A stretch of 62,987 nt of DNA, the filler included, from Octopus bimaculoides (lineage: Eukaryota): assembly GCF_001194135.2 (NCBI RefSeq). It is 7 parts of 6 records of this genome, joined end to end, with 100 filler letters (N's around TTAATTAATTAA, not from the genome) between each part and the next. Parts side by side here need not be neighbours in the genome. Positions count along the whole stretch, not along the records: positions 3,577 to 15,372 come from NC_069010.1; 6 more parts are not named here. One strand, 5' to 3'. Below are positions 3,577 through 15,956 of the stretch, one piece after another. Under the pieces are notes generated by a model that was not told where the DNA came from, searched no databases, and saw only the letters and a program-made list of their open reading frames with translations. The position numbers and the translations under genes are program-made. How positions within the stretch are numbered: position 1 is the stretch's first letter; each line of letters opens with the position of its first letter.

Positions 3577-3780
3577 GCTCGTGTTGGCGGAAGAGAAGAC
3601 TTCCTCAGAGCTTGTTTGAAGGTCTGCACCAAACGTTCCGCTGCTCCGTTGGTAGCTGGGTGGTAAGGTGCCCCTGTCAGGTGTGTGATCCCGCGTTCTT
3701 TGCACCAGCTCTGGAACTCCTCAGACGTAAAAGTTGGTGCATTATCGGTGACCAGTGTGTGAGGAATTCCCTCGGGAAAC
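3577..3780 (-). mobile_element. Ty3/Gypsy LTR retrotransposon integrase (rve) core fragment
   Basis: Translation EGIPHTLVTDNAPTFTSEEFQSWCKERGITHLTGAPYHPATNGAAERLVQTFKQAL contains the second D and the E of the DD35E triad and the YHP.xNG.AER motif. Confidence 0.92.
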
Positions 3781-3785
3781 ATAAC

Positions 3786-3868
3786 AAAAAGTATTTGCTG
3801 TCCACGGACCCCCTGTCTTATCCTTGCGGACCCCCTGTGGTCCGCGGACCACAGTTTGAAAACCCCTG
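3786..3868 (-). mobile_element. Terminal fragment of a Charlie-type hAT MITE, same family as 25438-25732
   Basis: Ends in GTTTGAAAACCCCTG (reverse complement of TIR CAGGGGTTTTCAAAC), followed by TTCTAGAA, which fits the NTCTAGAN target consensus. Confidence 0.85.
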
Positions 3869-4484
3869 TTCTAGAAAACTCTTGCTGACTGCTACAAAGC
3901 CATTCGCAAACACAAGGGTTTTTTTTTTTACCAAGGGGCATAACTCTTAACCTAATCCCTTACTCGATTCCTTTCATCGACAAACCGGATGTGTCCCTTC
4001 ACATCCAAGAATAAGAGAAAAGTCGCCATATTTCGTTCCATGACATGACCATAATCTGTCCTTTACCTAACAATCCGTTGAACTCCGACTACGAACACGA
4101 TTGGCAAGATCGGCCGTAATAGATATATAATACATACTGTACACTTCGATTAACATATATATATATATCGAATGCATTAAATGCGCCTCATTATAACTGA
4201 TATAAAATGCTGTGTCATACCAAAACTAGTTGGACAACGTGAAGCAAACAAGCAATTGTTCTTCTCCATCATATAATACGATGAAAAGTTGCTGAGAATT
4301 GGTAAGTGAGGAATATATTGATGTCACAAACAAATATAAGGAATGGTTTCTATGTTTACAACTAATTAATATGGGCGATCTTTTGAAACGAGTCCTAAAT
4401 ATCGGCCTTTTCCGTAAAAAGTGTCTTCGGCGATCTTTACCAAAGATCGCCCTTTTCCTTAACACCCGCACGATCTTCACTACG

Positions 4485-4601
4485 GTGTCAGGGTTAGGGT
4501 TTTAGTGTCAGGGTTAGGGTTTTAGGGTTAGGGTTACGATTACGGTTAGGGACGGAATTCTCTAACCCAAGCCCTAAAACCCAAACCCTAACCGTAAACC
4601 C
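4485..4601. repeat. Degenerate telomeric-like repeats arranged as (TTAGGG)n then (CCCTAA)n
   Basis: GGGTTAGGGTTTTAGGGTTAGGGTTA is followed by CTAACCCAAGCCCTAAAACCCAAACCCTAACC, with GAATTC near the centre. Confidence 0.85.
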
Positions 4602-4679
4602 TTCAAAAGAAATCGTGCTCTCTGTATCTCTTTCGCTTTTACGGTGTCCTTTCCCTCTTTCTCGTTGCAATTAAATTAA

Positions 4680-5275
4680 TATGTTCTGTGTGCAGGAACA
4701 ACAAGCACTAAGAGCATACGGGACTTGGATTCTCTCAAATACCCAGGGGGCTCTTTTGGGGTTGTAGATAGTTTCTCTTACGTAGGTGACCAAATTAGCA
4801 ATGGTGTAGGATGCGCTGAAAGCATTGTTTCTAGAATAAGAATAGGGTGGAGGAAGTTTAGAGAGCTCTGTTGTCAACAAAAGGATTCTCAGAGTGAAAG
4901 GTAGACTGTGTGATGCTTGTGTGCGAACGGCTATACTCCATAGTAGTGAGACGTGGGCTCTGAATGCAGAAGACATGCATAGACTGGAGAGAAATGAAGG
5001 TAGTATGCTCTGTTGGATGTGCAACATCAGTGCACATGTACAACAAAGTGCAAATGTATTGAGAGAAAAGTTGGGCATAAGAGGAGTCAAATGTAGCATG
5101 CAAGAGAGAAGACTATGTTAGTTTGGACATGTGATGCGTATGAATGAGGATAGGTGTATAAAGAAGTGCTGATCACTGAAAGTGGATGGCTCCTGTGGAA
5201 GAGGGAGACTCAGGAAGACGTGAGATGAAGTGGTGAGGACCGATCTCAGGATGTTGGGCCTCACGGAGGAAATGA
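4680..5275 (+). mobile_element. RTE-clade LINE, degraded 3' portion of ORF2
   Basis: KGRLCDACVRTAILHSSETWALNAEDMHRLERNEGSMLCWMC...LREKLGIR...QERRL, followed by a GRGRLRKT-type motif typical of post-RT RTE sequence; contains stops. Confidence 0.9.
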
Positions 5276-5513
5276 GGGATAAAGGTAGATTAGATTTAAA
5301 CAGTCTGTTTATGAAATCTTAGTAGATTTATCATGTCTCTAACACACACCCATAGCAAATTATAGAGGGACCTTTAGAAAGTTGACTGCACTGACAAATG
5401 TCTAACGTATTTGATCAGTTTGATCAAGTACCCAGTAGAAGACAGTAATGACACATTGATATCAACCCTAATTTTCATTTAACTTTTTGTTTCATATTTT
5501 TATCTTCTCAAAG

Positions 5514-5723
5514 GATTCAACGCAATTGGATATAAAGAACCGTAAGCAAATGACACCATTACTTGAAGCTGTCTCCGGGGGTCATATTGGGATGATTCGC
5601 CAGCTGATAGCAAGAGGAGCAGACGTAAATGCTGTTGATGGTAGTGGCAGTAACTGTCTGCACCTTGCTGTGGAGAAAGAGGTGTTTCATTCCGAGGGTG
5701 AAACCCTAAGTATTTTAGACGAG
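5514..5723 (+). CDS. MIB2-like: Internal exon (210 bp, phase 0-0) of a Mind bomb-2-like E3 ligase; ankyrin repeats
   Basis: Polypyrimidine tract with AG at 5512-5513; GTAAGT donor at 5724. Translation DSTQLDIKNRKQMTPLLEAVSGGHIGMIRQLIARGADVNAVDGSGSNCLHLAVEKEVFHSEGETLSILDE contains TPL..A...GH and GADVN..D..G..CLHLA ankyrin motifs. Confidence 0.93.
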
Positions 5724-5959
5724 GTAAGTTTTTAAATTGTTTGTGAATATGTGTAGTGTGTGTGTGTGTGTGTGTGTTTGAGAGAGAAAGAGACGGACAT
5801 TGCATGTCATGCCTCAGTTCACACCCATCAACCCCAACCTCCATTACCATTGAGTAATCCACTCTCTCCTGATAACTTAATTATATTATGTAACTAACTC
5901 CATATCCCTTACACCCTTAAAGACATAGCTCCTCCACCACAGAGAAGATGACCCATCTC

Positions 5960-6540
5960 AGATGTTGGGCATATAAACACAGCCATCACAGAGTGATGGA
6001 GGGGTGACCTACTCAAGATATTCCCAAATGACTGTGATATAGGGTAGAGGAGAGGTGATGCATAGGAATGAGGACAACTGTATAAAGAAGTACTAATCCC
6101 TGAAAGTGGGTGGTACCTGTGGAAGAGAGAGACCCCAGGAAGATGTGGGATGAAGTGGTGAGGACCGATCTCAGGATGTTGGGCCTCACGGAGGAAACGA
6201 CAAGGGACCGAAATGTCTGGCAATGTGAGGTTCTTGGAAAGACCCACCCACATCAGCAAAACTGAGTTCTGGAAATGCTATGTATTCCACCGAATAAAAC
6301 TTTTTGCACACCCTACCCCAACAAACCAAANNNNNNNNNNTGCATAGGAATGAGGACAACTGTATAAAGAAGTACTAATCCCTGAAAGTGGGTGGTACCT
6401 GTGGAAGAGAGAGACCCCAGGAAGATGTGGGATGAAGTGGTGAGGACCGATCTCAGGATGTTGGGCCTCACGGAGGAAACGACAAGGGACCGAAATGTCT
6501 GGCAATGTGAGGTTCTTGGAAAGACCCACCCACATCAGCA
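5960..6540 (+). mobile_element. RTE LINE 3' fragment, present twice across a 10-N gap (about 6061-6330 and 6341-6610)
   Basis: Same GAAGAGAGAGACCCCAGGAAGATGTGGGATGAAGTGGTGAGGACCGATCTC region as the 4680-5275 copy; the two units are essentially identical. Confidence 0.8.
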
Positions 6541-7250
6541 AAACTGAGTTCTGGAAATGCTATGTATTCCACCGAATAAAACTTTTTGCACACCCTACCC
6601 CAACAAACCAAACTACATCTCTTCTCTTCCTCACATTTCCTCTTGCTCCCAAATCTTGTCTTCACTGTATCATTGCTATCCTGTTGTCCCCCATACCGCT
6701 AAGCATTCCGTCCGGCGTGCTAATGTTTCTGCCAGCTTGTCACCTTGTTTCTTTATTAATTATGGAAATATTATTGGTATGTTTAGGATATTTCTGTTTG
6801 GTGTTGGTTTTGTTGTTATGTCTGAAGAAATTGATATGTTGTAGGTGTTCTCTGTTCTGATAACTTACATTGTTTGTTGTTATGTTCATATACAATACAC
6901 TTCCATAAGTATTTCTTTTGGTGTGGCCAGTTGGCTTTATCACACCAGTTGTACAGATAGGATTTTGTTGGCCTGTTGTGTTTCGTATTTTATTCTTGTG
7001 ATGTTTGTTCCATTATATTTCCCATATTTGTGATGAGGCTATCATTTGTTTCATCATCATCATCGTTTAACGTCCGCCTTCCATGCTAGCATGGGTTGGA
7101 CGATTTGACTGAGGACTGGTGAAACCGGATGGCAACACCAGGCTCCAATCTAAATTTGGCAGAGTTTCTACAGCTGGATACCCTTCCTAACGCCAACCAC
7201 TCAGAGAGTTGTGTAATATTCTACTCTATTTTATATTTCATCATTTCTAG

Positions 7251-7426
7251 TGTTGCATTGAACTCAAACTGAACAAGGAAAACAGGCTCTCTGGTGTAAT
7301 AGTCGCTAGTTATCTAGCTCACCAGGGAGCCAGCTTTTATCATATGAACAACAAGAACGAAACCCCATTGGACCTCATCAAGAATCGAAATTTGAAAGAA
7401 AACTTACGAACGTTTTTACTATCCCG
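7251..7426 (+). CDS. MIB2-like: Internal exon (176 bp, phase 0-2) of the MIB2-like gene; last ankyrin repeat
   Basis: TTTCTAG acceptor; GTAAGT donor at 7427. Translation CCIELKLNKENRLSGVIVASYLAHQGASFYHMNNKNETPLDLIKNRNLKENLRTFLLS(R) resembles the recalled MIB2 segment VACFLALEGADVSYTNHRGRSPLDL. Confidence 0.9.
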
Positions 7427-7475
7427 GTAAGTATTCACTGGCAATGACAAGATGGACCAGTACATACCCTCTCTT

Positions 7476-7704
7476 TACTCTTTTATTTGTTTCAGTCATT
7501 TGACTGTGGCCATGCTGGAGCACCGCCTTTTTTAGTCGAGAGAATCGACCCCAATTCTTATTCTTTGTAAGCCTAGTACTTATTCTATCGGTCTATCTTT
7601 TGCCGGACCGCTAAGTTACGGGGACGTAAACACACCAGCATCAGTTGTCAAGCGATGTTGGGTGGACAAACACAGACACACAAACATATACATACATACA
7701 TACA

Positions 7705-7757
<53 letters not shown>

Positions 7758-8082
7758 CATCATCATCATCGTTTAACGTCCGCTTTCCATGCTAGCATGG
7801 GTTGGACGATTTGACTGAGGACTGGTGAAAACCAGATGGCTACACCAGGCTCCAATCTGATTTGGCAGAGTTTCTACAGCTGGATGCCCTTCCTAACGCC
7901 AACCACTCAGAGAATATATATATACATATATACGACAGGCTTCTTTCAGTTTCCATCTACCGAATCCACTCACAAGGCTTTGGTCGGCCCGAGGCTATAG
8001 TAGAAGACACTTGCCCATGATGCCACGCAGTGGGACTGAACCCAGAACCATGTGGTTGGTAAGCAAGCTACTTACCACACAG
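7476..8082 (-). mobile_element. Long tRNA-head SINE with an internal (TA/CA)n microsatellite; other copies at 10825-11536(-), 14998-15372(-), 43480-43665(+, partial), 45812-46203(-), 60360-60520(+, partial), 60650-61020(-)
   Basis: Shared sense sequence TGTGTGGTAAGTAGCTTGC...GGTTCAGTCCCACTGCGTGGCACCTTGGGCAAGTGTCTTC...GGTGCTCCAGCATGGCCACAGTCAAATGACTGAAAC, with a B-box-like GGTTCAGTCCC. Confidence 0.88.
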
Positions 8083-9817
8083 TCCATGTTTATATGTTTG
8101 TTTTTAGATCCCTATCATTCTACAGATGTGATTCTCTAGGGCATAGTATGTTATCCTGGTACTGTGACTATTTCATTTCAACTGAGAATGAGCAACATAA
8201 ACCCTTTTTTATATAAATTAGGGTCTTGCACTAATTGCAGATAGCTTCACCAGAGTTCGTTTATGCAGCAGAGAAAGGCTTTGGTGAAGTGGAGATAGAT
8301 AACATCTACCCATGGGCCACTGTCTGTGATTTAGGCTGATGTCCTCAAGAAGTTCTAGGAGTCAGCTACAGCATCTGGAGTTAGGGATAAATCCAAATTC
8401 TGAGGGTTGAATAAGGTTATGTGAGTTACAGATTTTTCAAAGTATCTCTTTCTCTCTCACATAGAAGACCATAAATTTGGTGAGGCAGTTAGTGAAGCCC
8501 TTTTACAAGCGCTCTCCAGGATCAAATTAGCTTATATCATCATCATGATTTAACGTCCGCTTTCCATGCTAGCATGGGTTGGACGATTTGACTGAGGACT
8601 GGTGCAACCGGATGGCTACACCAGGCTCCAAATATATGTATANNNNNNNNNNNNNNNNNNNNNNNNNNNNNNNNNNNNNNNNNNNNNNNNNNNNNNNNNN
8701 NNNNNNNNNNNNNNNNNNNNNNNNNNNNNNNNNNNNNNNNNNNNNNNNNNNNNNNNNNNNNNNNNNNNNNNNNNNNNNNNNNNNNNNNNNNNNNNNNNNN
8801 NNNNNNNNNNNNNNNNNNNNNNNNNNNNNNNNNNNNNNNNNNNNNNNNNNNNNNNNNNNNNNNNNNNNNNNNNNNNNNNNNNNNNNNNNNNNNNNNNNNN
8901 NNNNNNNNNNNNNNNNNNNNNNNNNNNNNNNNNNNNNNNNNNNNNNNNNNNNNGGTGGCACATAAAACACACCATTTTGAGCGTGGCCGTTGCCAGAACC
9001 GCCTGACTGGCCTTCATGTGGGTGACACGTAAAAGCACCCACTACACTCTCGGAGTGGTTGGCGTTAGGAAGGGCATCCAGCTGTAGAAACTCTGCCAAA
9101 TCAGATTGGAGCCTGGTGTAGCCATCCGGTTTCACCAGTCCTCAGTCAAATCGTCCAACCCATGCTAGCATGGAAAGCGGACGTTAAACGATGATGATGA
9201 TGATGATGATGATGATTGATATATATATATATATATACACACAACACACGCACATATACATGCATGTGTGAGTCACTCAAGCACAAGTCTGTCTGTATGT
9301 AATTGTATATCTTTAGAGTAGCATTGTAGGGTAGGTGTGAGAGGTAGGATCTGGCTGGTTTGAGTGTAAAACAGGTAGAATATTTGGGCCGGATATGGCC
9401 GGTTTAAATGCTAAAGGGTTAAAGAAGAATTTGTGACGTTTTCTTGCTGGTCTCTGTAATGTCTTGTTATATTCTGTACTGTAAACATGTACACAATGTA
9501 ATCATCATCATCATCATCATCATTGTTTAACGTCCGCACCAGGCTCCAATCTAATTTGGCAGAGTTTCTACAGCTGGATGCCCTTCCTAACGCCAACCAC
9601 TCAGAGAGTGTAGTGGGTGCTTTTACGTGTCACCCGCACGAAAACGGCCACGCTCGAAATGGTGTCTTTTATGTGCCACCCGCACAAGAGCCAGTCCAGG
9701 GGCACTGGCAACGATCTCACTCGAAAATCCTACGGGAGCCAGTCAGGCGGTACTGGCAACGGCCCGTGTTATAAACGAATGTTATTGGTGAGGTGTATTT
9801 CTGTTTTTTTTGTACAG

Positions 9818-9966
9818 GTTACCGTGTCTGTTTTGTGAAGATAAAGAGGCCACCATAACCTTCCATCCATGTGGACATTGTGTGTTGTGTTTGGAATGCT
9901 GTCCAAAACGTCTACCTAGGCGATGCCTCAAATGCCGGCAACCTGTATCTGGCAGAAGTGGATTTG
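9818..9966 (+). CDS. MIB2-like: Internal exon (149 bp, phase 2-1) of the MIB2-like gene; RING finger
   Basis: T-rich TACAG acceptor; GTGAGA donor at 9967; in frame with the previous exon. Translation LPCLFCEDKEATITFHPCGHCVLCLECCPKRLPRRCLKCRQPVSGRSGF is a MIB/IAP-type C3HC4 RING (C..C...PCGH...C..C...C..C). Confidence 0.93.
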
Positions 9967-11340
9967 GTGAGAATACTATTTAATGATCTGTCTGTTTGTC
10001 TCGTTGACTTTATGGTGTAGAATATCATCATCATCATCATCATCTTCGTTTAACGTCCGCTTTCCATGCTAGCATGGGTTGGACGATTTGACTGAGGACT
10101 GGTGAAACCAGATGGCTGCACCAGGCTCCAATCTGATTTGGCAGAGTTTCTACAGCTGGATGCCCTTCCTGACGCCAACCACTCAGAGAGTGTAGTGGGT
10201 GCTTTTACGTGTCACCCGCACGAAGGCCAGTCAGGCGGTACTGGCAATGGCCACGCTCAAAATGGTGTATTTTACGTGCCACCTGCACAGGAGCCAGTCC
10301 AGTGGTACTGGCAACGATCTTGCTCAAATGTCTTTACACGTGTCACCGGCACAAGTGCCAGGAAGGCGACGCTGGGCACTGGTGCTGTCACGATTTCGCT
10401 TATGTACTTTATTTTGTTGTGTAGATTCTGATCTGGCAGATTTATGATAAAAGTTGTCTTAGGTGTCTTTTTTTCTGTGATAGTAAATCTGTCACTACAT
10501 CTGTTAGACTTTATCCAAGCAAGAAAACCAGTCACAATTCAGGAAAGTATTGTCTGAAACATGTGACTAATGAATGATACTGTAACATAAATGGTGACTA
10601 GCAGAAACATCTCCCATTTTACAGTTGGCGGCGAGTGATTAGAGGTGATTAATGATTTATCAGTGTCTGGGTAAGCTGGTAATTAAAGTCAGTGGGACTT
10701 ACAAGAACACCAATGTCTGCTTTGGTAAAGTGGGAGATTGGATCAGAAAATCCCAACTGAGTGTTTAAGGACCAACATTAGCAAGCCTGGGAGTTGAATC
10801 AGGTGTTTTGTTTATATTGGTAATTCTTTTACTCTTTTACATGTTTCAGTCATTTGACTGCGGCCATGCTGGAGCACCGCCTTTTCACTCGAGCTAATCG
10901 ACCCCAGGACTTATTCTTTGTAAGCCTAGTACTTATTCTGTCGGTCTCTTTTTGCCGAACCGTTAAGTTACGGGGATGTAAACACACCAGCATCGGTTGT
11001 CAAGTGATGTTGGGGGGAACAAACACAGACACACAAACATATACACACATATACATCATCATCATCATCATCATCGTTTAACGTCCGCTTTCCATGNNNN
11101 NNNNNNNNNNNNNNNNNNNNNNNNNNNNNNNNNNNNNNNNNNNNNNNNNNNNNNNNNNNNNNNNNNNNNNNNNNNNNNNNNNNNNNNNNNNNNNNNNNNN
11201 NNNNNNNNNNNNNNNNNNNNNNNNNNNNNNNNNNNNNNNNNNNNNNNNNNNNNNNNNNNNNNNNNNNNNNNNNNNNNNNNNNNNNNNNNNNNNNATCTCG
11301 CTCGAAAATCCTACGGGAGCCAGTCAGGCGGTACAGCTGG

Positions 11341-11383
<43 letters not shown>

Positions 11384-11946
11384 TACAACCGGCTTCTTTC
11401 AGTTTCTGTCTACCAAATCTACTCACAAGGCTTTGGTCGGCCCGAGGCTATGGTAGAAGACACTTGCCCCAAGGTGCCACGCAGTGGGACTGAACCCGGA
11501 ACCATATGGTTGGTAAGCAAGGTACTTACCACACAGACACGTCCTCCAGAAATTCTTCATGATTTTTCATTTATGAAGATCTCAAATAGTTTGCTGTTTG
11601 ATATGAGATGTCATCTATTGTTGAGGTCTGTACTCAGACTGTCAGAAAAGATTATATGCTGTAGCAATCAATAACCAAAGATAATTGCAGCGTTTTTACA
11701 TTATGTCGGATGTCTTAATAGAGAGAGAGGAGGTTTAGGAAGGTTAGTCTATTCTGTTGAGGAACTAAATATTGAGCTATTATATAGTACCACTGTAGAA
11801 AGTGTGACAATGCTGTACCAAACCACAGTGGTCACCAGTTGACCATTGATGATAGGAATGTCTCCTCACAGTAATCGAATACAGATAATTAATAAAGATG
11901 AAGAAATGTTACTTCAAAGTGTAAAACTTGGAAATGTTTATTTCAG

Positions 11947-11997
11947 AGGGTCCAAAGTTGTCTGACAAGGAAGTCCAAACGGCGGCAGAGCCAGGTG
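11947..11997 (+). CDS. Predicted 51-bp linker micro-exon (phase 1-1), (E)GPKLSDKEVQTAAEPG
   Basis: TTTATTTCAG acceptor and GTGAGT donor at 11998. Phase matches the RING exon and the exon is homologous to the 14891 exon. No transcript evidence. Confidence 0.68.
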
Positions 11998-12239
11998 GTG
12001 AGTACAAAATAAGTGTACATAACTATGTTAGTCCACAGAACTCCAAAAGGAACATAGGGGTGGTTTCCTGGTCCCTCTGGCATAGGTATATTCCTCACTG
12101 GATGGGACGCTGCTTCATGACAGAATTACCTATTTTCACAAGCTGAGTGGGCTGGGGCATTGTGAAATAAAAGTGTTTTGCTCAAGAACACAATACATTG
12201 CCCAGTCCAGGAATTGAAACCACAATCTAATAATCATAG

Positions 12240-13070
12240 CAGTGACTCGGCTATCAGAGCAAGGTCATCAGCATAGAGAAGCTCCCAGGGGCAGCCTATT
12301 TTGAATTCCTCTGTTATTGCCTGGAGGACTATGATGAATAAAAGGGGGCTGAGAACTGATCCTTGGTGAACCCCTACTTCTACCCAGAAGTCTTGACTAT
12401 ACTCGTTGCCTTACTGACAGCATCCCTGTACAGGTCTTACCAACCACTCGTCTATCCCCAGCTTCTGCATTGACCACCAGATAAAGGATATGGGGACCTT
12501 GTCAAAGGCTTCTCCAAGTCAACAAAAGACAAGTACAGAGGTTTATCTTTGGCTAGGTATTTCTCCTGCAGTTGCCTTACCAGAAATATAGCATCAGTGG
12601 TGCTTCTGCCTGGCACAAAACCAAACTGCATCTCACCTAGGCTAACTCTCTCCCTAATTAGTTAGGCTATGACCCTTTCTGAAACTTTCATCACCTGATC
12701 CAATAATTTGATGCCCCAATAGTTATTTCTATCTAAAGCATCACCTTTACTTTTGTAGCAGCTGACTATGGTGCTGCTACACCAGTCATTGGGTATGACT
12801 CCTTCATGAACTACCTGATTTACGATGTGGGTGACAAGACCATAACCTACATCGCCTGATATTTTAAGCATCTCAGGGGTTATTCCTGATGGGCCAGGTG
12901 CTTTCCCTGTCTTCATATCCTTAATTGCTGTATCTACCAAGGTACTGTTGATTTGGGTAGCTGGTCCCTCTACTGGGTCAACATTTGGCAGACTCTCCTC
13001 CTCCTATTCATTCTCCACATTCAGCAGTCTTTTTATAATGGCATCTCCAAGCCTCTTCCTTTGCAGAATC
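12240..13070 (-). mobile_element. RTE-clade LINE reverse-transcriptase fragment
   Basis: MKTGKAPGPSGITPEMLK...VIPNDWCSSTIVSCYKSKGDALDRNNYWGIKLLDQVMKVSERV covers the RT N-terminal motifs; the QFGF-like and F.DLEKAFD-like segments follow, with stops. Confidence 0.92.
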
Positions 13071-13084
13071 ATTGGATCTAGTTC

Positions 13085-13267
13085 AAAACGGGGGCGCCAG
13101 TATTTTCTTAACGAAACACTTTGAAACTTGGGACACTGGTAGAATGTGTCATATAAAACATCTTTTTCTTTTAGTCTTCTTAAGAAAAATTATTATATTG
13201 CAACTTATTTCATGTTAAATTTGTCGTATTTCTGTAATTTCAACCAATCACTGACGTCCATTCAGCC
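13085..13267 (+). mobile_element. Terminal-inverted-repeat arm of the same foldback family as 25828-26694, inside an intron of the MIB2-like gene
   Basis: ACGAAACACTTTGAAACTTGGGACACTGGTAGAATGTGTCATATAAAACATC...TTTCAACCAATCACTGACGTC matches 25864-26010. Confidence 0.8.
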
Positions 13268-14030
13268 NNNNNNNNNNNNNNNNNNNNNNNNNNNNNNNNN
13301 NNNNNNNNNNNNNNNNNNNNNNNNNNNNNNNNNNNNNNNNNNNNNNNNNNNNNNNNNNNNNNNNNNNNNNNNNNNNNNNNNNNNNNNNNNNNNNNNNNNN
13401 NNNNNNNNNNNNNNNNNNNNNNNNNNNNNNNNNNNNNNNNNNNNNNNNNNNNNNNNNNNNNNNNNNNNNNNNNNNNNNNNNNNNNNNNNNNNNNNNNNNN
13501 NNNNNNNNNNNNNNNNNNNNNNNNNNNNNNNNNNNNNNNNNNNNNNNNNNNNNNNNNNNNNNNNNNNNNNNNNNNNNNNNNNNNNNNNNNNNNNNNNNNN
13601 NNNNNNNNNNNNNNNNNNNNNNNNNNNNNNNNNNNNNNNNNNNNNNNNNNNNNNNNNNNNNNNNNNNNNNNNNNNNNNNNNNNNNNNNNNNNNNNNNNNN
13701 NNNNNNNNNNNNNNNNNNNNNNNNNNNNNNNNNNNNNNNNNNNNNNNNNNNNNNNNNNNNNNNNNNNNNNNNNNNNNNNNNNNNNNNNNNNNNNNNNNNN
13801 NNNNNNNNNNNNNNNNNNNNNNNNNNNNNNNNNNNNNNNNNNNNNNNNNNNNNNNNNNNNNNNNNNNNNNNNNNNNNNNNNNNNNNNNNNNNNNNNNNNN
13901 NNNNNNNNNNNNNNNNNNNNNNNNNNNNNNNNNNNNNNNNNNNNNNNNNNNNNNNNNNNNNNNNNNNNNNNNNNNNNNNNNNNNNNNNNNNNNNNNNNNN
14001 NNNNNNNNNNNNNNNNNNNNNNNNNNNNNG

Positions 14031-14078
14031 AGATTCCAAAGTCTGGAGAGAAAGTCCCAAAGACATCACAGAATGTTG
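14031..14078 (+). CDS. Predicted 48-bp linker micro-exon (phase 1-1), (E)IPKSGEKVPKTSQNV
   Basis: GTAAGT donor at 14079. The acceptor lies mostly in the N gap (only G14030 is visible). Aligns codon by codon with the 11947 exon (CCA AAG..TCT..GTC C.A). Confidence 0.55.
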
Positions 14079-14274
14079 GTAAGTGTAAAATAACAGCAGC
14101 TAATTGATCTCTATAAACTTTACCTGCAGGTGGGGCATAATTTGTTTGTGAGAATGACAAAGGACAGGTTCCATGCCTGTATTTCAATTGAACAGTTAGC
14201 TGTAAAGTGATATCTATTAAAGATATTGATATTACTGAAATATCATAAAATATCCACTGAGATAACATAAGAAG

Positions 14275-14620
14275 CATCAGTAGTGGTGTGCAAGAGAGAC
14301 GATTGCGTTGGTATGGGCATGTGGCGAGAATGGAGGAGGATAGCTGTGTGAGAAAGTGCCACACCCTAGCAGTTGAGGGAACCTGTGGAAGAGGTAGGCC
14401 CAGGAAGACCTGGGATGAGTTGGTGAAGCACGACCTCCGAACATTGGGCCTCACCGAGGCAATGACCTCTGACCGAGACCTTTGGAAATATGCTGTGCAT
14501 GAGAAGACACGGCAAGCCAAGTGAGACCTAAATCCAAAGCCTCTACCAGGATGCGTTTCTGCCTACATTGGACACTAAACTCCGCTTGCGAAGACCTGTT
14601 GAGGCAAGTGAAATCGAATT
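14275..14620 (+). mobile_element. RTE LINE 3' end
   Basis: QERRLRWYGHVARMEEDSCVRKCHTLAVEGTCGRGRPRKTWDELVKHDL is a canonical RTE C-terminus. Confidence 0.92.
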
Positions 14621-14890
14621 AAATGACATAATTGCAACGTTGTTAGATTATGTAGGATGCCTTAATAGAGAGAGAGGGGGGGATATAGGAAGGTTGGTCT
14701 GTTTTGTTGTGGACCTAAATATTGAGCAGTTATGTGGGACCATGATAGAAAGTAAAATGTTGACCAAAATCATAGTGGTCACCAGTTGACCATTGATGAT
14801 AGGAATGTCTGACAGTAATAAACTATAGATTATTTATAGAGAGAAGGAAATTTTACAGTAAATTATAAAACTTGGAACTATTTATTTCAG

Positions 14891-14962
14891 AGAGTTCAAA
14901 AGTGGAGGAACAAGATCTCCTGAGAGTGGCTAAGAATTTAGGAACTAACTGGTGGCAAGTGG
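14891..14962 (+). CDS. Predicted 72-bp exon (phase 1-1) encoding the N-terminal helices of a death domain, (E)SSKVEEQDLLRVAKNLGTNWWQV(G)
   Basis: TTTATTTCAG acceptor and GTGAGT donor at 14963. DLLRVAKNLG..W..VG matches the death-domain start pattern L..lA..LG.dW..La. Downstream exons are lost at the 15373 join. Confidence 0.75.
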
Positions 14963-15956
14963 GTGAGTATACCTTAGCAACACCCGATTTATTTCCCTTT
15001 TACTCTTTTAGTTGTTTCAGTCATTTGACTGTGGCCATGCTGGAGCACCGCCTTTAGTCGAGCAAATCGACCCCAGGACTTATTCTTTGGAAGCCTAGTA
15101 CTTATTCTATCGGTCTCTTTTTCCGAACCGCTAAGTTACAGGGACGTAAACACACCAGCATCGGTTGTCAAGCGATGGTGGGGGGACAAACACAGACACA
15201 CAAACATATACACACACATACACATATATACGACGGGATTCTTTCAGATTCCGTCTACCAAATCCACTCAGAAGGCTTTAGTTGGAGTGAAGCTACAGTA
15301 GAAGATACTTGCCCAAGGTGCCACGCAATGGGACTGAACCCGGAACCATGTGGTTGGGAAGCAAGCTACTTGNNNNNNNNNNNNNNNNNNNNNNNNNNNN
15401 NNNNNNNNNNNNNNNNTTAATTAATTAANNNNNNNNNNNNNNNNNNNNNNNNNNNNNNNNNNNNNNNNNNNNTCTTCTTCTTCTTCTTCTTCTTCTTCTT
15501 CTTCGCCACCTCCATTATCTACTACCACTGCTGCTTAAACAATCAAAGACAAGAATTCATATCAAACTAACTGCTGCTAATTACCTAGAACCCACAAGAG
15601 TGAAAAAAAGAGACAGAGACAGACTGAAAAAAGGAAAATGTCCCTTGCATTTGAAAACTATGGAAATATTTTTAAAAAAACATTTCATTTAATTTTTCCA
15701 CAATTGTTTTTCATGCTTTACTTTAAGTTCAAAAAGTCGCAAAGACTGAAACCAGTACTAAAATGTTCTTCATGATAAAATTATTTTAGAATTTTCTTCC
15801 TTGTCTTATTTTCCTTATACATATCAACTCGTGTGTTCCTTTTCAACCTTCTACATATATATTTTTTTTTATTTTCATTCTCTTTGAAATTGCTTTTATC
15901 CGTGGTTTGGGTTTTAACTGCCCTTTCTAGCATGTACAGTGTCCTGTCTTTGTATA

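What the first reader, a model, noticed from the sequence alone, without database searches (positions are those of the whole stretch)
5514..14962. Mind bomb-2-like ANK-RING protein that appears to continue into a death domain
Seen: six exons with canonical splice signals join in one open frame. The first three are collinear with the C-terminal ankyrin repeats and first RING of Mind bomb proteins. Known: MIB1/MIB2 follow this RING with further RING(s), not a death domain. Inference: here the RING is followed by short linkers and DLLRVAKNLGTNWWQVG, the start of a death domain. That would give a ubiquitin ligase fused to a death-fold adaptor, plausibly a lineage-specific immune or apoptosis regulator.
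Basis: partly seen in the sequence, partly recalled or inferred. Interest (0 to 1): 0.72.

Follow-up and report, generated by a model that had tools for sequence, protein, structure and literature searches.

The report
Octopus ankyrin–RING–death-domain ubiquitin ligase gene
This is a real Octopus bimaculoides gene in which a Mind-bomb-type ankyrin–RING ubiquitin-ligase module is joined by a floppy linker to a genuine death domain; it belongs to a multi-copy family found here only in octopuses, already in public annotation (as "MIB2") but not found described in the papers searched.

Summary
Six exons (5514-5723, 7251-7426, 9818-9966, 11947-11997, 14031-14078, 14891-14962) join in one frame with GT-AG signals. 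All four assembly gaps lie in introns; only the exon 5 acceptor is hidden by a gap.

The spliced product is 100% identical to a 287-aa NCBI model, "E3 ubiquitin-protein ligase MIB2 [Octopus bimaculoides]". A seventh exon lies beyond the piece, after a 1687-N gap, and completes a death domain:
- Pfam PF00531 scores 29.5 bits against a cutoff of 22.6.
- The AlphaFold model is a six-helix bundle with pLDDT 91.
- All best PDB matches are death domains (PIDD, RIPK1, RAIDD, ankyrin).

Exons 1-3 align collinearly with the last ankyrin repeats and RING1 of a true Mind bomb protein. Full-length paralogues lack the Mind bomb N-terminal domains and carry one RING, so "MIB2" names a resemblance.

Every protein matching RING plus death domain came from three Octopus species, at many loci. 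A paralogous locus has the same intron positions.

The linker exons are disordered, and exon 4 arose by tandem duplication of the death-domain exon's start.

Function is inferred, not shown: a RING ligase recruited into death-domain signalling assemblies. The finding is correct, publicly annotated and moderately interesting.

The parts
5514..5723 (+). Exon 1 of the piece (phase 0-0). It encodes one canonical ankyrin repeat plus the start of an atypical last repeat: DSTQLDIKNRKQMTPLLEAV...ILDE. The NCBI model starts at Met 5550, but homology to paralogues runs back to the acceptor at 5514.
   Evidence: (Ank 7e-8). Paralogues share ...DS(V/T)xL(D/E)I... upstream of the Met.
7251..7426 (+). Exon 2, the last, degenerate ankyrin-like repeat: CCIELKLNKENRLSGVIVASYLAHQGASFYHMNNKNETPLDLIKN...LLS(R). 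It ends in phase 2.
   Evidence: 100% to P0001 residues 59-117. Same junctions in paralogue L002.
9818..9966 (+). Exon 3, a C3HC4 RING finger of the MIB/IAP type with all eight zinc ligands: CLFC...PCGHCVLCLEC...CLKC. An Arg follows the last Cys. Read-through of the donor reaches a stop after 5 codons (9981-9983).
   Evidence: Pfam zf-C3HC4_3 33.9 bits against cutoff 27. PDB profile hits to cIAP1/2 and XIAP RINGs at 1e-8 to 1e-5. Collinear with MIB RING1. ORF 9810-9983.
11947..11997 (+). Exon 4, a 51-nt symmetric (phase 1-1) linker mini-exon: (E)GPKLSDKEVQTAAEPG. It is a tandem duplicate of the 5' part of the death-domain exon 6.
   Evidence: About 310 nt upstream plus the exon start are about 80% identical to the region upstream of exon 6, at spacing 2944. 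Predicted disordered.
14031..14078 (+). Exon 5, a 48-nt symmetric (phase 1-1) linker mini-exon: (E)IPKSGEKVPKTSQNV. Its acceptor is hidden in gap 13268-14029; only 'g' at 14030 is visible.
   Evidence: Counterparts in paralogues...TTSQQI|ESP...VKQQQV|ETP. Predicted disordered.
14891..14962 (+). Exon 6, the first death-domain exon covering helices 1-2: (E)SSKVEEQDLLRVAKNLGTNWWQV(G). The domain is completed by exon 7 at L001:21806-22001, outside the window piece and beyond a 1687-N gap.
11690..11946 (+). Intron segment upstream of exon 4, paralogous to 14640-14890 upstream of exon 6. This is the footprint of the tandem duplication that created the linker exon.
   Evidence: alignment A3; families D11, D12.
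6059..6612 (.). Two 272-nt, 100% identical copies either side of the 10-N gap in intron 1. This is an unmerged assembly overlap, so the intron is probably 282 nt shorter than written.
   Evidence: D3; period 282, 2.0 copies.

Best explanation
**What it is (shown).** The window holds the middle of a real, intact protein-coding gene of Octopus bimaculoides. Its product has a Mind-bomb-type ankyrin-repeat plus single C3HC4 RING module. This is followed by a disordered linker of about 35 residues, built from two symmetric mini-exons, and a C-terminal death domain of the PIDD/RIPK1/ankyrin kind.

**Family (shown).** It is one member of a multi-locus family detected only in Octopus species. Several relatives lie on the same 10-Mb chromosome. 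The closest relatives are only about 50% identical, which suggests rapid turnover.

**Likely missing N-terminus (inferred).** The NCBI model is probably truncated at its N-terminus. An upstream ankyrin exon, now annotated as a separate gene, matches the first exon of a paralogue. The missing ankyrin exons would lie in a 5085-N gap.

**How it most likely works (inferred).**
- The RING recruits an E2 and transfers ubiquitin.
- The death domain docks the ligase by homotypic DD-DD contacts into oligomeric death-domain assemblies (DISC-, PIDDosome- or Myddosome-like).
- The ankyrin repeats bind the substrate or a further partner.
- The flexible linker, whose number of cassettes varies between paralogues and isoforms, sets the reach.

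This would hard-wire a relationship that in mammals is indirect: MIB2 ubiquitylates the DD protein RIPK1 and cFLIP in TNF complexes.

**My estimates.** Gene and architecture real: about 0.9. Active E3: about 0.6. DD acts as a recruiting module in cell-death or innate-immune signalling: about 0.4.
For: **Gene and frame.** Canonical junctions and one open frame. The product is 100% identical to a 287-aa NCBI model carrying precomputed PF00531 + PF13920 + ANK. The last exon was found at L001:21806-22001.

**Domains.**
- Pfam Death 29.5 bits (cutoff 22.6) and zf-C3HC4_3 33.5 bits (cutoff 27).
- DD profile against PDB: PIDD 9e-10, RIPK1 1e-7, ankyrin-3 1e-6, FADD 1e-4.
- AF2 DD model: pLDDT 91.3, six helices.
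- The top 40 Foldseek matches are all death domains at TM 0.6-0.84, most 0.75-0.84; the CARD and pyrin matches that follow have probability below 0.5.
- Linker residues 167-201 have pLDDT below 50.

**Conservation.**
- The same exon order and intron positions occur in paralogue locus L002 on another chromosome.
- A family alignment of 28 proteins has conserved Zn ligands and DD core.
- All RING+DD hits are Octopus.

**MIB-type module.** Collinear alignment to a true Mind bomb protein.

**N-terminus.** L001:2428-2613 is 48% identical to exon 1 of P0117 and ends at the same junction.

**Functional precedent.** MIB2 acts on RIPK1 and cFLIP in TNF signalling (PMC5912950, PMC7815719). Oyster IAPs carry BIR-DD-RING (PMC8917759).
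Against: - No transcript evidence could be examined here. The searches returned no assembled-transcript protein for this gene; all family hits came from genome annotations.
- The exon 5 acceptor is hidden in a gap, and exon 7 is separated from exon 6 by a 1687-N gap.
- Read-through of the RING-exon donor stops after 5 codons, so a DD-less isoform is possible. O. sinensis models P0007 and P0009 end in retained linker introns.
- DD-only genes of the same cassette exist (P0107, P0126, P0133), so fusion of neighbouring genes by the annotator is conceivable.
- Some paralogues have degenerate RINGs (H to D; P0004 lacks three ligands), so ligase activity is not universal in the family.
- No functional data exist for any member.
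Confidence: 0.75

Rival explanations
1. Annotation fusion. The ANK-RING gene ends at or just after the RING exon. The linker and death-domain exons belong to a separate neighbouring DD-only gene, so no RING-DD protein is made from this locus.
For: DD-only family members exist, some on the same chromosome (P0107, P0126, P0133). The RING-exon donor read-through stops after 5 codons. DD-less models P0007 and P0009 exist. No transcript data were examined.
Against: Four successive junctions (E3-E4-E5-E6-E7) are all phase-compatible with open frames. The same ANK-RING-linker-DD order and intron positions recur at a paralogous locus. They also recur in dozens of models from three species. No start codon or upstream exon for a separate DD gene is evident between E3 and E4.
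Confidence: 0.07
2. The locus is a partial or decaying duplicate in a birth-and-death family. It is an N-terminally truncated copy (the 287-aa model has only about two ankyrin repeats) that is weakly expressed or not expressed, and has no function of its own.
For: The NCBI model begins inside exon 1. The region upstream is filled with transposon fragments (rve integrase, LINE tails). The nearest relative is only 53% identical, and no close orthologue was found in O. sinensis or O. vulgaris. The searches returned no assembled-transcript protein for it; all family hits came from genome annotations.
Against: All seven known exons are intact, with all 8 zinc ligands and all family-invariant DD core residues. 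Exon 1 has a good acceptor, and its homology continues upstream of the Met. An upstream ankyrin exon homologous to a paralogue's first exon lies beyond the 5085-N gap. This points to an assembly or annotation split rather than truncation.
Confidence: 0.12
3. Same protein, different logic. The death domain acts mainly in cis as an autoinhibitory or oligomerisation switch for the RING, as the CARD does in cIAP1. It is not a recruiting adaptor for other DD proteins.
For: The RING is closest in profile to cIAP1/2 and XIAP RINGs. cIAP1's CARD autoinhibits its RING (Lopez et al. 2011, as cited in PMC8917759). A long flexible linker would allow fold-back.
Against: The domain is a DD, not a CARD. The same DD cassette occurs alone and on an adhesion GPCR tail (P0139), which fits a portable interaction module. 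The AF2 full-length model shows no confident RING-DD packing (pTM 0.43).
Confidence: 0.2
4. Same protein, but its biology is neural or developmental, not immunity or cell death. It would act in Notch-ligand-type endocytosis or in axon-guidance and adhesion-GPCR signalling.
For: Mind bomb ligases act in Notch signalling (PMC7815719 abstract). DDs also occur in UNC5 and ankyrins. An octopus adhesion GPCR carries this DD cassette (PMC6408891). Octopus-specific expansions are often neural (my own knowledge).
Against: The MIB N-terminal domains, which bind Notch ligands (my own knowledge), are absent from full-length paralogues. Rapid divergence and multi-copy turnover are more typical of immune-type families (inference).
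Confidence: 0.2

Closest known systems
Mind bomb E3 ligases (MIB1/MIB2)
   Same: C-terminal ankyrin repeats, including the atypical long last repeat, run straight into a zf-C3HC4_3 RING. A single collinear alignment to a true Mind bomb protein covers residues 470-648 and ends in RING1, with a near-identical RING tail. MIB2 works on death-domain complexes in mammals (PMC5912950, PMC7815719).
   Different: Full-length octopus paralogues have no MIB/HERC2, ZZ or Mind bomb SH3-repeat domains. There is one RING instead of two or three, and a death domain sits where RING2 would be. The name 'MIB2' is a best-hit label.
IAP ligases with a death-fold domain: cIAP1/2 (BIR-UBA-CARD-RING) and oyster BIR-DD-RING IAPs
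   Same: A RING of the same Pfam class sits in one chain with a death-fold domain; cIAP1/2 and XIAP are the best PDB profile hits. Molluscs are known to shuffle DDs into RING ligases (PMC8917759).
   Different: There is no BIR domain. The order is RING then DD, not DD/CARD then RING. The N-terminal module is ankyrin repeats.
Death domains of PIDD1, RIPK1, RAIDD/CRADD and ankyrins
   Same: Best sequence-profile and fold matches; six-helix bundle at TM 0.75-0.84 and rmsd about 2 A. NCBI names one paralogue 'p53-induced death domain-containing protein 1-like'.
   Different: Identity is only 19-28%. None of the partner domains (LRR/ZU5/UPA, kinase, CARD) is present. No orthology to a particular DD protein can be claimed.
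Ankyrin-repeat plus death-domain proteins (NF-kB p105/p100, ANKDD1A/B, DAPK1, ankyrins)
   Same: Ankyrin repeats lie N-terminal to a C-terminal DD in one chain (my own knowledge of these architectures).
   Different: None of them has a RING between the two. No RHD, kinase or ZU5-UPA domains were found here.

Membership tests
Mind bomb (MIB1/MIB2) E3 ligases | N-terminal MIB/HERC2 domains flanking a ZZ zinc finger | tested here: not met
   Pfam scans of full-length paralogues (P0116 545 aa, P0123 563 aa, P0124 505 aa, P0154 574 aa) show only ANK, one RING and Death. For this locus the N-terminus lies in a gap. The one upstream exon found is ankyrin.
Mind bomb (MIB1/MIB2) E3 ligases | Mind bomb SH3-like REP repeats (PF18346) | tested here: not met
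   Absent from all family members scanned. Present in the true MIB comparator P0190.
Mind bomb (MIB1/MIB2) E3 ligases | Ankyrin repeat block followed collinearly by a zf-C3HC4_3 RING | tested here: met
   Single BLASTP alignment of window exons 1-3 to P0190 residues 470-648, E=2e-17. Pfam Ank and zf-C3HC4_3 are both above cutoff.
Mind bomb (MIB1/MIB2) E3 ligases | Two (MIB2) or three (MIB1) C-terminal RING fingers | tested here: not met
   There is one RING stretch only, followed by the linker and a death domain.
Death domain (DD subfamily of the death-fold superfamily, PF00531) | Sequence match to the DD profile above the curated threshold | tested here: met
   P0001 residues 207-279 score 29.5 bits against cutoff 22.6, E=8.5e-7. 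Paralogues reach 39-45 bits. The family profile hits PIDD DD at 9e-10.
Death domain (DD subfamily of the death-fold superfamily, PF00531) | Six-helix antiparallel bundle, closer to DD than to CARD, DED or PYD | tested here: met
   This rests on a predicted structure only. AF2 gives pLDDT 91.3 and six helices. Foldseek ranks 1-41 are all DDs; the CARD and PYD matches that follow have probability below 0.5.
Death domain (DD subfamily of the death-fold superfamily, PF00531) | Homotypic DD-DD assembly | not testable with these tools
   Needs binding or oligomerisation assays.
RING-type E3 ubiquitin ligases (zf-C3HC4_3 class) | Eight zinc ligands with C3HC4 spacing and a profile match above threshold | tested here: met
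   CLFC-x11-C-x-H-x3-C-x2-C-x9-C-x2-C, read directly from exon 3. Pfam 33.9 bits against cutoff 27.
RING-type E3 ubiquitin ligases (zf-C3HC4_3 class) | E2-dependent ubiquitin transfer | not testable with these tools
   Only indirect signs: a hydrophobic residue in CxFC and an Arg after the last Cys (sequence). Some paralogues have degenerate ligands.
Inhibitor of apoptosis proteins (IAP) | At least one BIR domain | tested here: not met
   No BIR hit in the window product or in any paralogue. BIR was detected in the RING-only comparators P0176 and P0207.
Ankyrin / UNC5 / PIDD type ZU5-UPA-DD supramodule | ZU5 and UPA domains preceding the DD | tested here: not met
   No ZU5 or UPA hits. The DD is preceded by a disordered linker.

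The most novel reading that the evidence does not exclude
Octopuses have built a private layer of death-domain signalling. It would be a rapidly turning-over, partly clustered family of ANK-RING-DD ligases. Their portable 'linker mini-exon + DD' cassette has also been exon-shuffled onto other proteins, including the cytoplasmic tail of an LRR adhesion GPCR. The length of their tether would be tuned by duplication and alternative splicing of symmetric 48-51-nt exons. Together these would couple ubiquitylation directly to DD assemblies in innate immunity or cell death.
Probability: 0.3. Interest if true: 0.55.

Novelty: new variant of a known kind. Interest (0 to 1): 0.4.

Why it matters
- **A natural fusion as a clue.** In mammals MIB2 reaches death-domain complexes (RIPK1, cFLIP) indirectly. 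Here a MIB-type ANK-RING module is physically fused to a DD. This fusion argues that the link between the two functions is old and useful.
- **Another mollusc example.** Molluscs rewire cell-death and immune signalling by domain shuffling, as in oyster BIR-DD-RING IAPs. This adds a case from cephalopods, whose immune genetics are little known.
- **Annotation.** Dozens of octopus genes named "MIB2", "MIB1", "ankyrin-3-like" or "26S proteasome non-ATPase regulatory subunit 10" are one family with a different architecture. At least this locus is probably split into two gene models by an assembly gap.
- **Limit on surprise.** Lineage-specific DD architectures are common in invertebrates, and the model is already public.

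Tried and rejected
- **PDB sequence search with exons 1-3.** It returned only generic designed ankyrin proteins, so it says nothing about the Mind bomb relationship. A direct comparison with a true MIB protein replaced it.
- **Fold search with the full-length model.** It was dominated by DARPins, although RAIDD, RIPK1 and ankyrin-G DDs and the MIB1 ANK structure did appear. It was repeated with a DD-only model.
- **Is exon 5 a duplicate of exon 4?** The DNA similarity (score 24 against shuffles 16 +/- 2.3, maximum 26) is not significant. Only the exon 4 / exon 6 duplication is established.
- **tRNA scan of the SINE-rich introns.** Nothing found.
- **Literature searches.** Searches for an ANK-RING-DD family or for octopus MIB2-like genes found no description.
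- **Homologues outside Octopus.** Three word-index searches and one full HMMER scan of 1.84 billion representatives found RING+DD matches in Octopus only. The coverage of squid, cuttlefish and Nautilus proteomes in these libraries is unknown to me.
- **P0088 (RING, partial DDs and LRR in one model).** I treated it as a probable chimeric gene model and did not build on it.

Full report
**Source and gaps**

The piece 3577-15372 is identical, base for base, to L001:8028-19823. That is Octopus bimaculoides assembly GCA_001194135.2, chromosome CM046630.1 (10.08 Mb), with window x = L001 x - 4451. Runs of N bound it on both sides: 5085 N upstream and 1687 N downstream.

The four internal gaps all fall in introns.
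- **6331-6340.** It sits between two 272-nt copies that are 100% identical (6059-6330 = 6341-6612). It is therefore an unmerged contig overlap, and intron 1 is probably 282 nt shorter than written.
- **8643-8953 and 11097-11294.** These are flanked by copies of the common octopus SINE in both orientations.
- **13268-14029.** It ends one base before exon 5, so only the last 'g' of that acceptor is visible.

No exon is broken. All exons are on the + strand in the order expected from a paralogous locus, so the scaffolding is credible. A further hidden 48-51-nt linker exon in the intron 3 or intron 4 gaps cannot be excluded.

**The exons**

| Exon | Coordinates | Content |
|---|---|---|
| E1 | 5514-5723 | ankyrin repeat |
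| E2 | 7251-7426 | last, degenerate ankyrin-like repeat |
| E3 | 9818-9966 | RING finger |
| E4 | 11947-11997 | linker mini-exon |
| E5 | 14031-14078 | linker mini-exon |
| E6 | 14891-14962 | first death-domain exon |

All visible junctions are AG|...|GT with polypyrimidine tracts. The phases are compatible (0, 2, 1, 1, 1) and the joined frame is open for 235 codons.

Pfam on the window's own product gives ankyrin (Ank 7e-8, Ank_4 1.7e-8) and zf-C3HC4_3 (2.7e-8, 33.9 bits against cutoff 27). It gives no Death hit, because only about 24 residues of that domain lie in the piece.

**The death domain is real**

The spliced peptide is 100% identical to a 287-aa NCBI protein, "E3 ubiquitin-protein ligase MIB2 [Octopus bimaculoides]" (P0001). 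That protein carries precomputed PF00531 (Death), PF13920 and ankyrin hits.

Its last 64 residues are encoded by a seventh exon at L001:21806-22001. The acceptor is ...ttttgcag|, the stop is TGA, and the exon lies just beyond the 1687-N gap.

Evidence for the domain:
- Pfam Death scores 29.5 bits (cutoff 22.6, E=8.5e-7) over residues 207-279.
- A profile of 11 family DDs hits the PIDD DD (9e-10), RIPK1 DD (1e-7), ankyrin-3 DD (1e-6), then FADD, Fas, TRADD and CRADD in the PDB.
- An AlphaFold2 model of the DD alone has pLDDT 91.3 and pTM 0.83, with six helices.
- Its top 40 Foldseek matches are all death domains (RAIDD, RIPK1, PIDD, ankyrin-G/-1, TRADD, FADD, TNFR1) at TM 0.6-0.84, most at 0.75-0.84, with rmsd about 2 A for the best. 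The CARD and pyrin matches that follow have probability below 0.5.

In the full-length model, residues 167-201, which are exons 4 and 5, have pLDDT below 50 and so form a disordered tether.

**The Mind bomb resemblance and its limits**

Exons 1-3 align in one piece with P0190, a true Mind bomb protein (Mind bomb SH3 repeats, ankyrin repeats, three RINGs). The alignment runs from its penultimate ankyrin repeat through the atypical last repeat into RING1 (residues 470-648, 28% identity, E=2e-17). The RING tails are almost identical: RCLKCRQPVSGR against RCLKCRQDVTGK.

Full-length octopus paralogues (P0116, P0123, P0124, P0154; 505-574 aa) contain only six to eight ankyrin repeats and one RING, and most also carry the DD. 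They have no MIB/HERC2, ZZ or REP domains. The family therefore shares the C-terminal module of Mind bomb but is not a Mind bomb orthologue. "MIB2" is a best-hit name. Other members are named "MIB1-like", "ankyrin-3-like", "26S proteasome non-ATPase regulatory subunit 10" or "ankyrin repeat protein RF_0381". By profile, the RING is also close to the cIAP1/2 and XIAP RINGs.

**A family seen only in Octopus**

Three word-index searches and one exhaustive HMMER scan of 1.84 billion representatives were run. The HMMER scan gave 613 hits at E<=1e-3 and 21 at E<=1e-30.

- Every protein that matched both RING and DD, and that I could name, came from O. bimaculoides, O. sinensis or O. vulgaris.
- Named hits from other animals matched the DD only or the RING only. 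DD-only hits came from starfish multi-DD proteins, amphioxus, a tubeworm and a sturgeon contaminant. RING-only hits came from MIB and IAP proteins.
- At least three more family members lie on the same 10-Mb chromosome (P0122, P0126, P0133).
- The nearest relative of this gene is only 53% identical, and no close orthologue appeared in the other two species. This suggests fast turnover.
- The window's copy keeps all eight zinc ligands and all family-invariant DD core residues. Some paralogues have degenerate RINGs (H to D; P0004 lacks three ligands).

**Independent support for the gene structure**

The paralogue P0117 (424 aa), on chromosome CM046629.1, has the same exon series with the same intron positions:
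- ...ILDE|CC...
- ...LLSR|
- RING...F|
- a 17-residue mini-exon
- a second 17-residue mini-exon
- ...WWQVG|I...stop

It is preceded by three ankyrin exons. Exon 5 has counterparts in paralogues (...TTSQQI|ESP...VKQQQV|ETP). This supports exon 5 although its acceptor is hidden.

**The N-terminus is probably mis-annotated**

NCBI starts P0001 at Met 5550, inside exon 1. However, homology to paralogues continues to the acceptor at 5514.

An ankyrin exon at L001:2428-2613, upstream of the 5085-N gap, is 48% identical to the first exon of P0117 and ends at the same junction. NCBI assigns it to a separate 154-aa gene, whose last "exon" is a tiny unsupported ORF ending at window 4295 (sequence).

The simplest reading is one gene of roughly 400 or more residues, split by the gap. 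This is an inference.

**How the linker arose**

The roughly 310 nt upstream of exon 4 and its first bases are about 80% identical to the region upstream of exon 6, at a spacing of 2944 nt. Exon 4 is therefore a tandem duplicate of the start of the DD exon that has become a symmetric (phase 1-1) linker cassette.

Paralogues carry from zero to four such cassettes, and isoforms differ in their number. Similarity between exon 5 and exon 4 is not significant at the DNA level.

**Mechanism**

- **Shown:** the domain content, order and integrity.
- **Inferred:** the RING binds an E2. The DD takes the ligase into oligomeric DD assemblies by homotypic contacts. The ankyrin repeats bind substrate. The disordered linker sets the reach.

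The inference rests on established properties of these domains. It also rests on two precedents. MIB2 ubiquitylates RIPK1 and cFLIP in TNF complexes (PMC5912950, PMC7815719). Oyster IAPs combine BIR, DD and RING (PMC8917759).

The rivals are a cis-regulatory DD as in cIAP1's CARD, a neural or developmental role, an annotation fusion, and a decaying duplicate. They are weighed in the Rival explanations section.

**Novelty**

The gene model and its Death hit are public. I found no paper describing the family. One paper notes a Death domain in a single O. bimaculoides adhesion GPCR (PMC6408891). That protein is probably P0139, which carries this same linker+DD cassette.

RING ligases with a death-fold domain, and ankyrin proteins with a DD, are both known. 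The combination ANK-RING-DD, and its restriction so far to Octopus, make it a new variant of a known kind. The finding is correct and tidy, and of moderate interest.

Noticed in passing
L001:2428-2613 (upstream of the piece) and window 4230-4295: The neighbouring NCBI gene model (154 aa, ankyrin) has a first-exon homologue of paralogue P0117. It ends in a tiny unsupported terminal ORF at window 4230-4295. It is probably the N-terminal half of the same gene, split off at the 5085-N gap.
   Followed up: partly
window 6059-6330 and 6341-6612: A perfect 272-nt duplication lies either side of a 10-N gap. This is an unmerged contig overlap, that is, an assembly artefact. The repeated unit is itself the tail of a LINE-like element.
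   Followed up: yes
window 11690-11960 vs 14640-14905: Tandem duplication at about 80% identity and spacing 2944 nt. It covers the intron end plus the exon start, and it created a symmetric linker mini-exon from the first death-domain exon.
   Followed up: yes
P0139 (O. bimaculoides, 1283 aa; not in the window): An LRR-GPS-7TM adhesion GPCR carries the same linker+death-domain cassette at its C-terminal tail (profile positions 43-165). This suggests exon shuffling of the cassette. It is probably the single DD-bearing GPCR mentioned in PMC6408891.
   Followed up: partly
window 9967-9983 and 11998-12146: Read-through of the RING-exon donor hits a stop after 5 codons (…GFGENTI*). Read-through of the exon 4 donor gives GEYKISVHN…, which resembles the C-termini of O. 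sinensis models P0007 and P0009. DD-less isoforms by intron retention are therefore possible.
   Followed up: no
window 4485-4551 and about 4553-4603: An interstitial telomere-like repeat, (TTAGGG)n-like, is followed by its reverse complement, (CCCTAA)n-like, in a short palindromic arrangement upstream of exon 1.
   Followed up: no
window 3577-3941 (- strand): Fragment of a retroelement or transposon integrase (Pfam rve, 36 bits), cut off by the upstream gap.
   Followed up: partly
window 12452-12940 (- strand); 5076-5275, 14266-14465 (+): A reverse-transcriptase fragment of a non-LTR element lies in intron 4 (weak RVT_1 hit, below cutoff, one internal stop). Repeated LINE-tail copies lie upstream of exon 1 and in introns 1 and 5.
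   Followed up: partly
window 7040-7200, 7746-7900, 8523-8639, 8954-9213 (inverted), 9500-9760, 10023-10400; and 7470-7711, 10830-11018, 14995-15231: Two families of short interspersed repeats fill introns 1-3 and the region after exon 6, in both orientations. They coincide with the edges of three assembly gaps. ARAGORN finds no tRNA-like part.
   Followed up: partly
P0088 (O. vulgaris, 278 aa; not in the window): A gene model combining the family RING, two partial death domains and leucine-rich repeats. It is probably a chimeric annotation.
   Followed up: no
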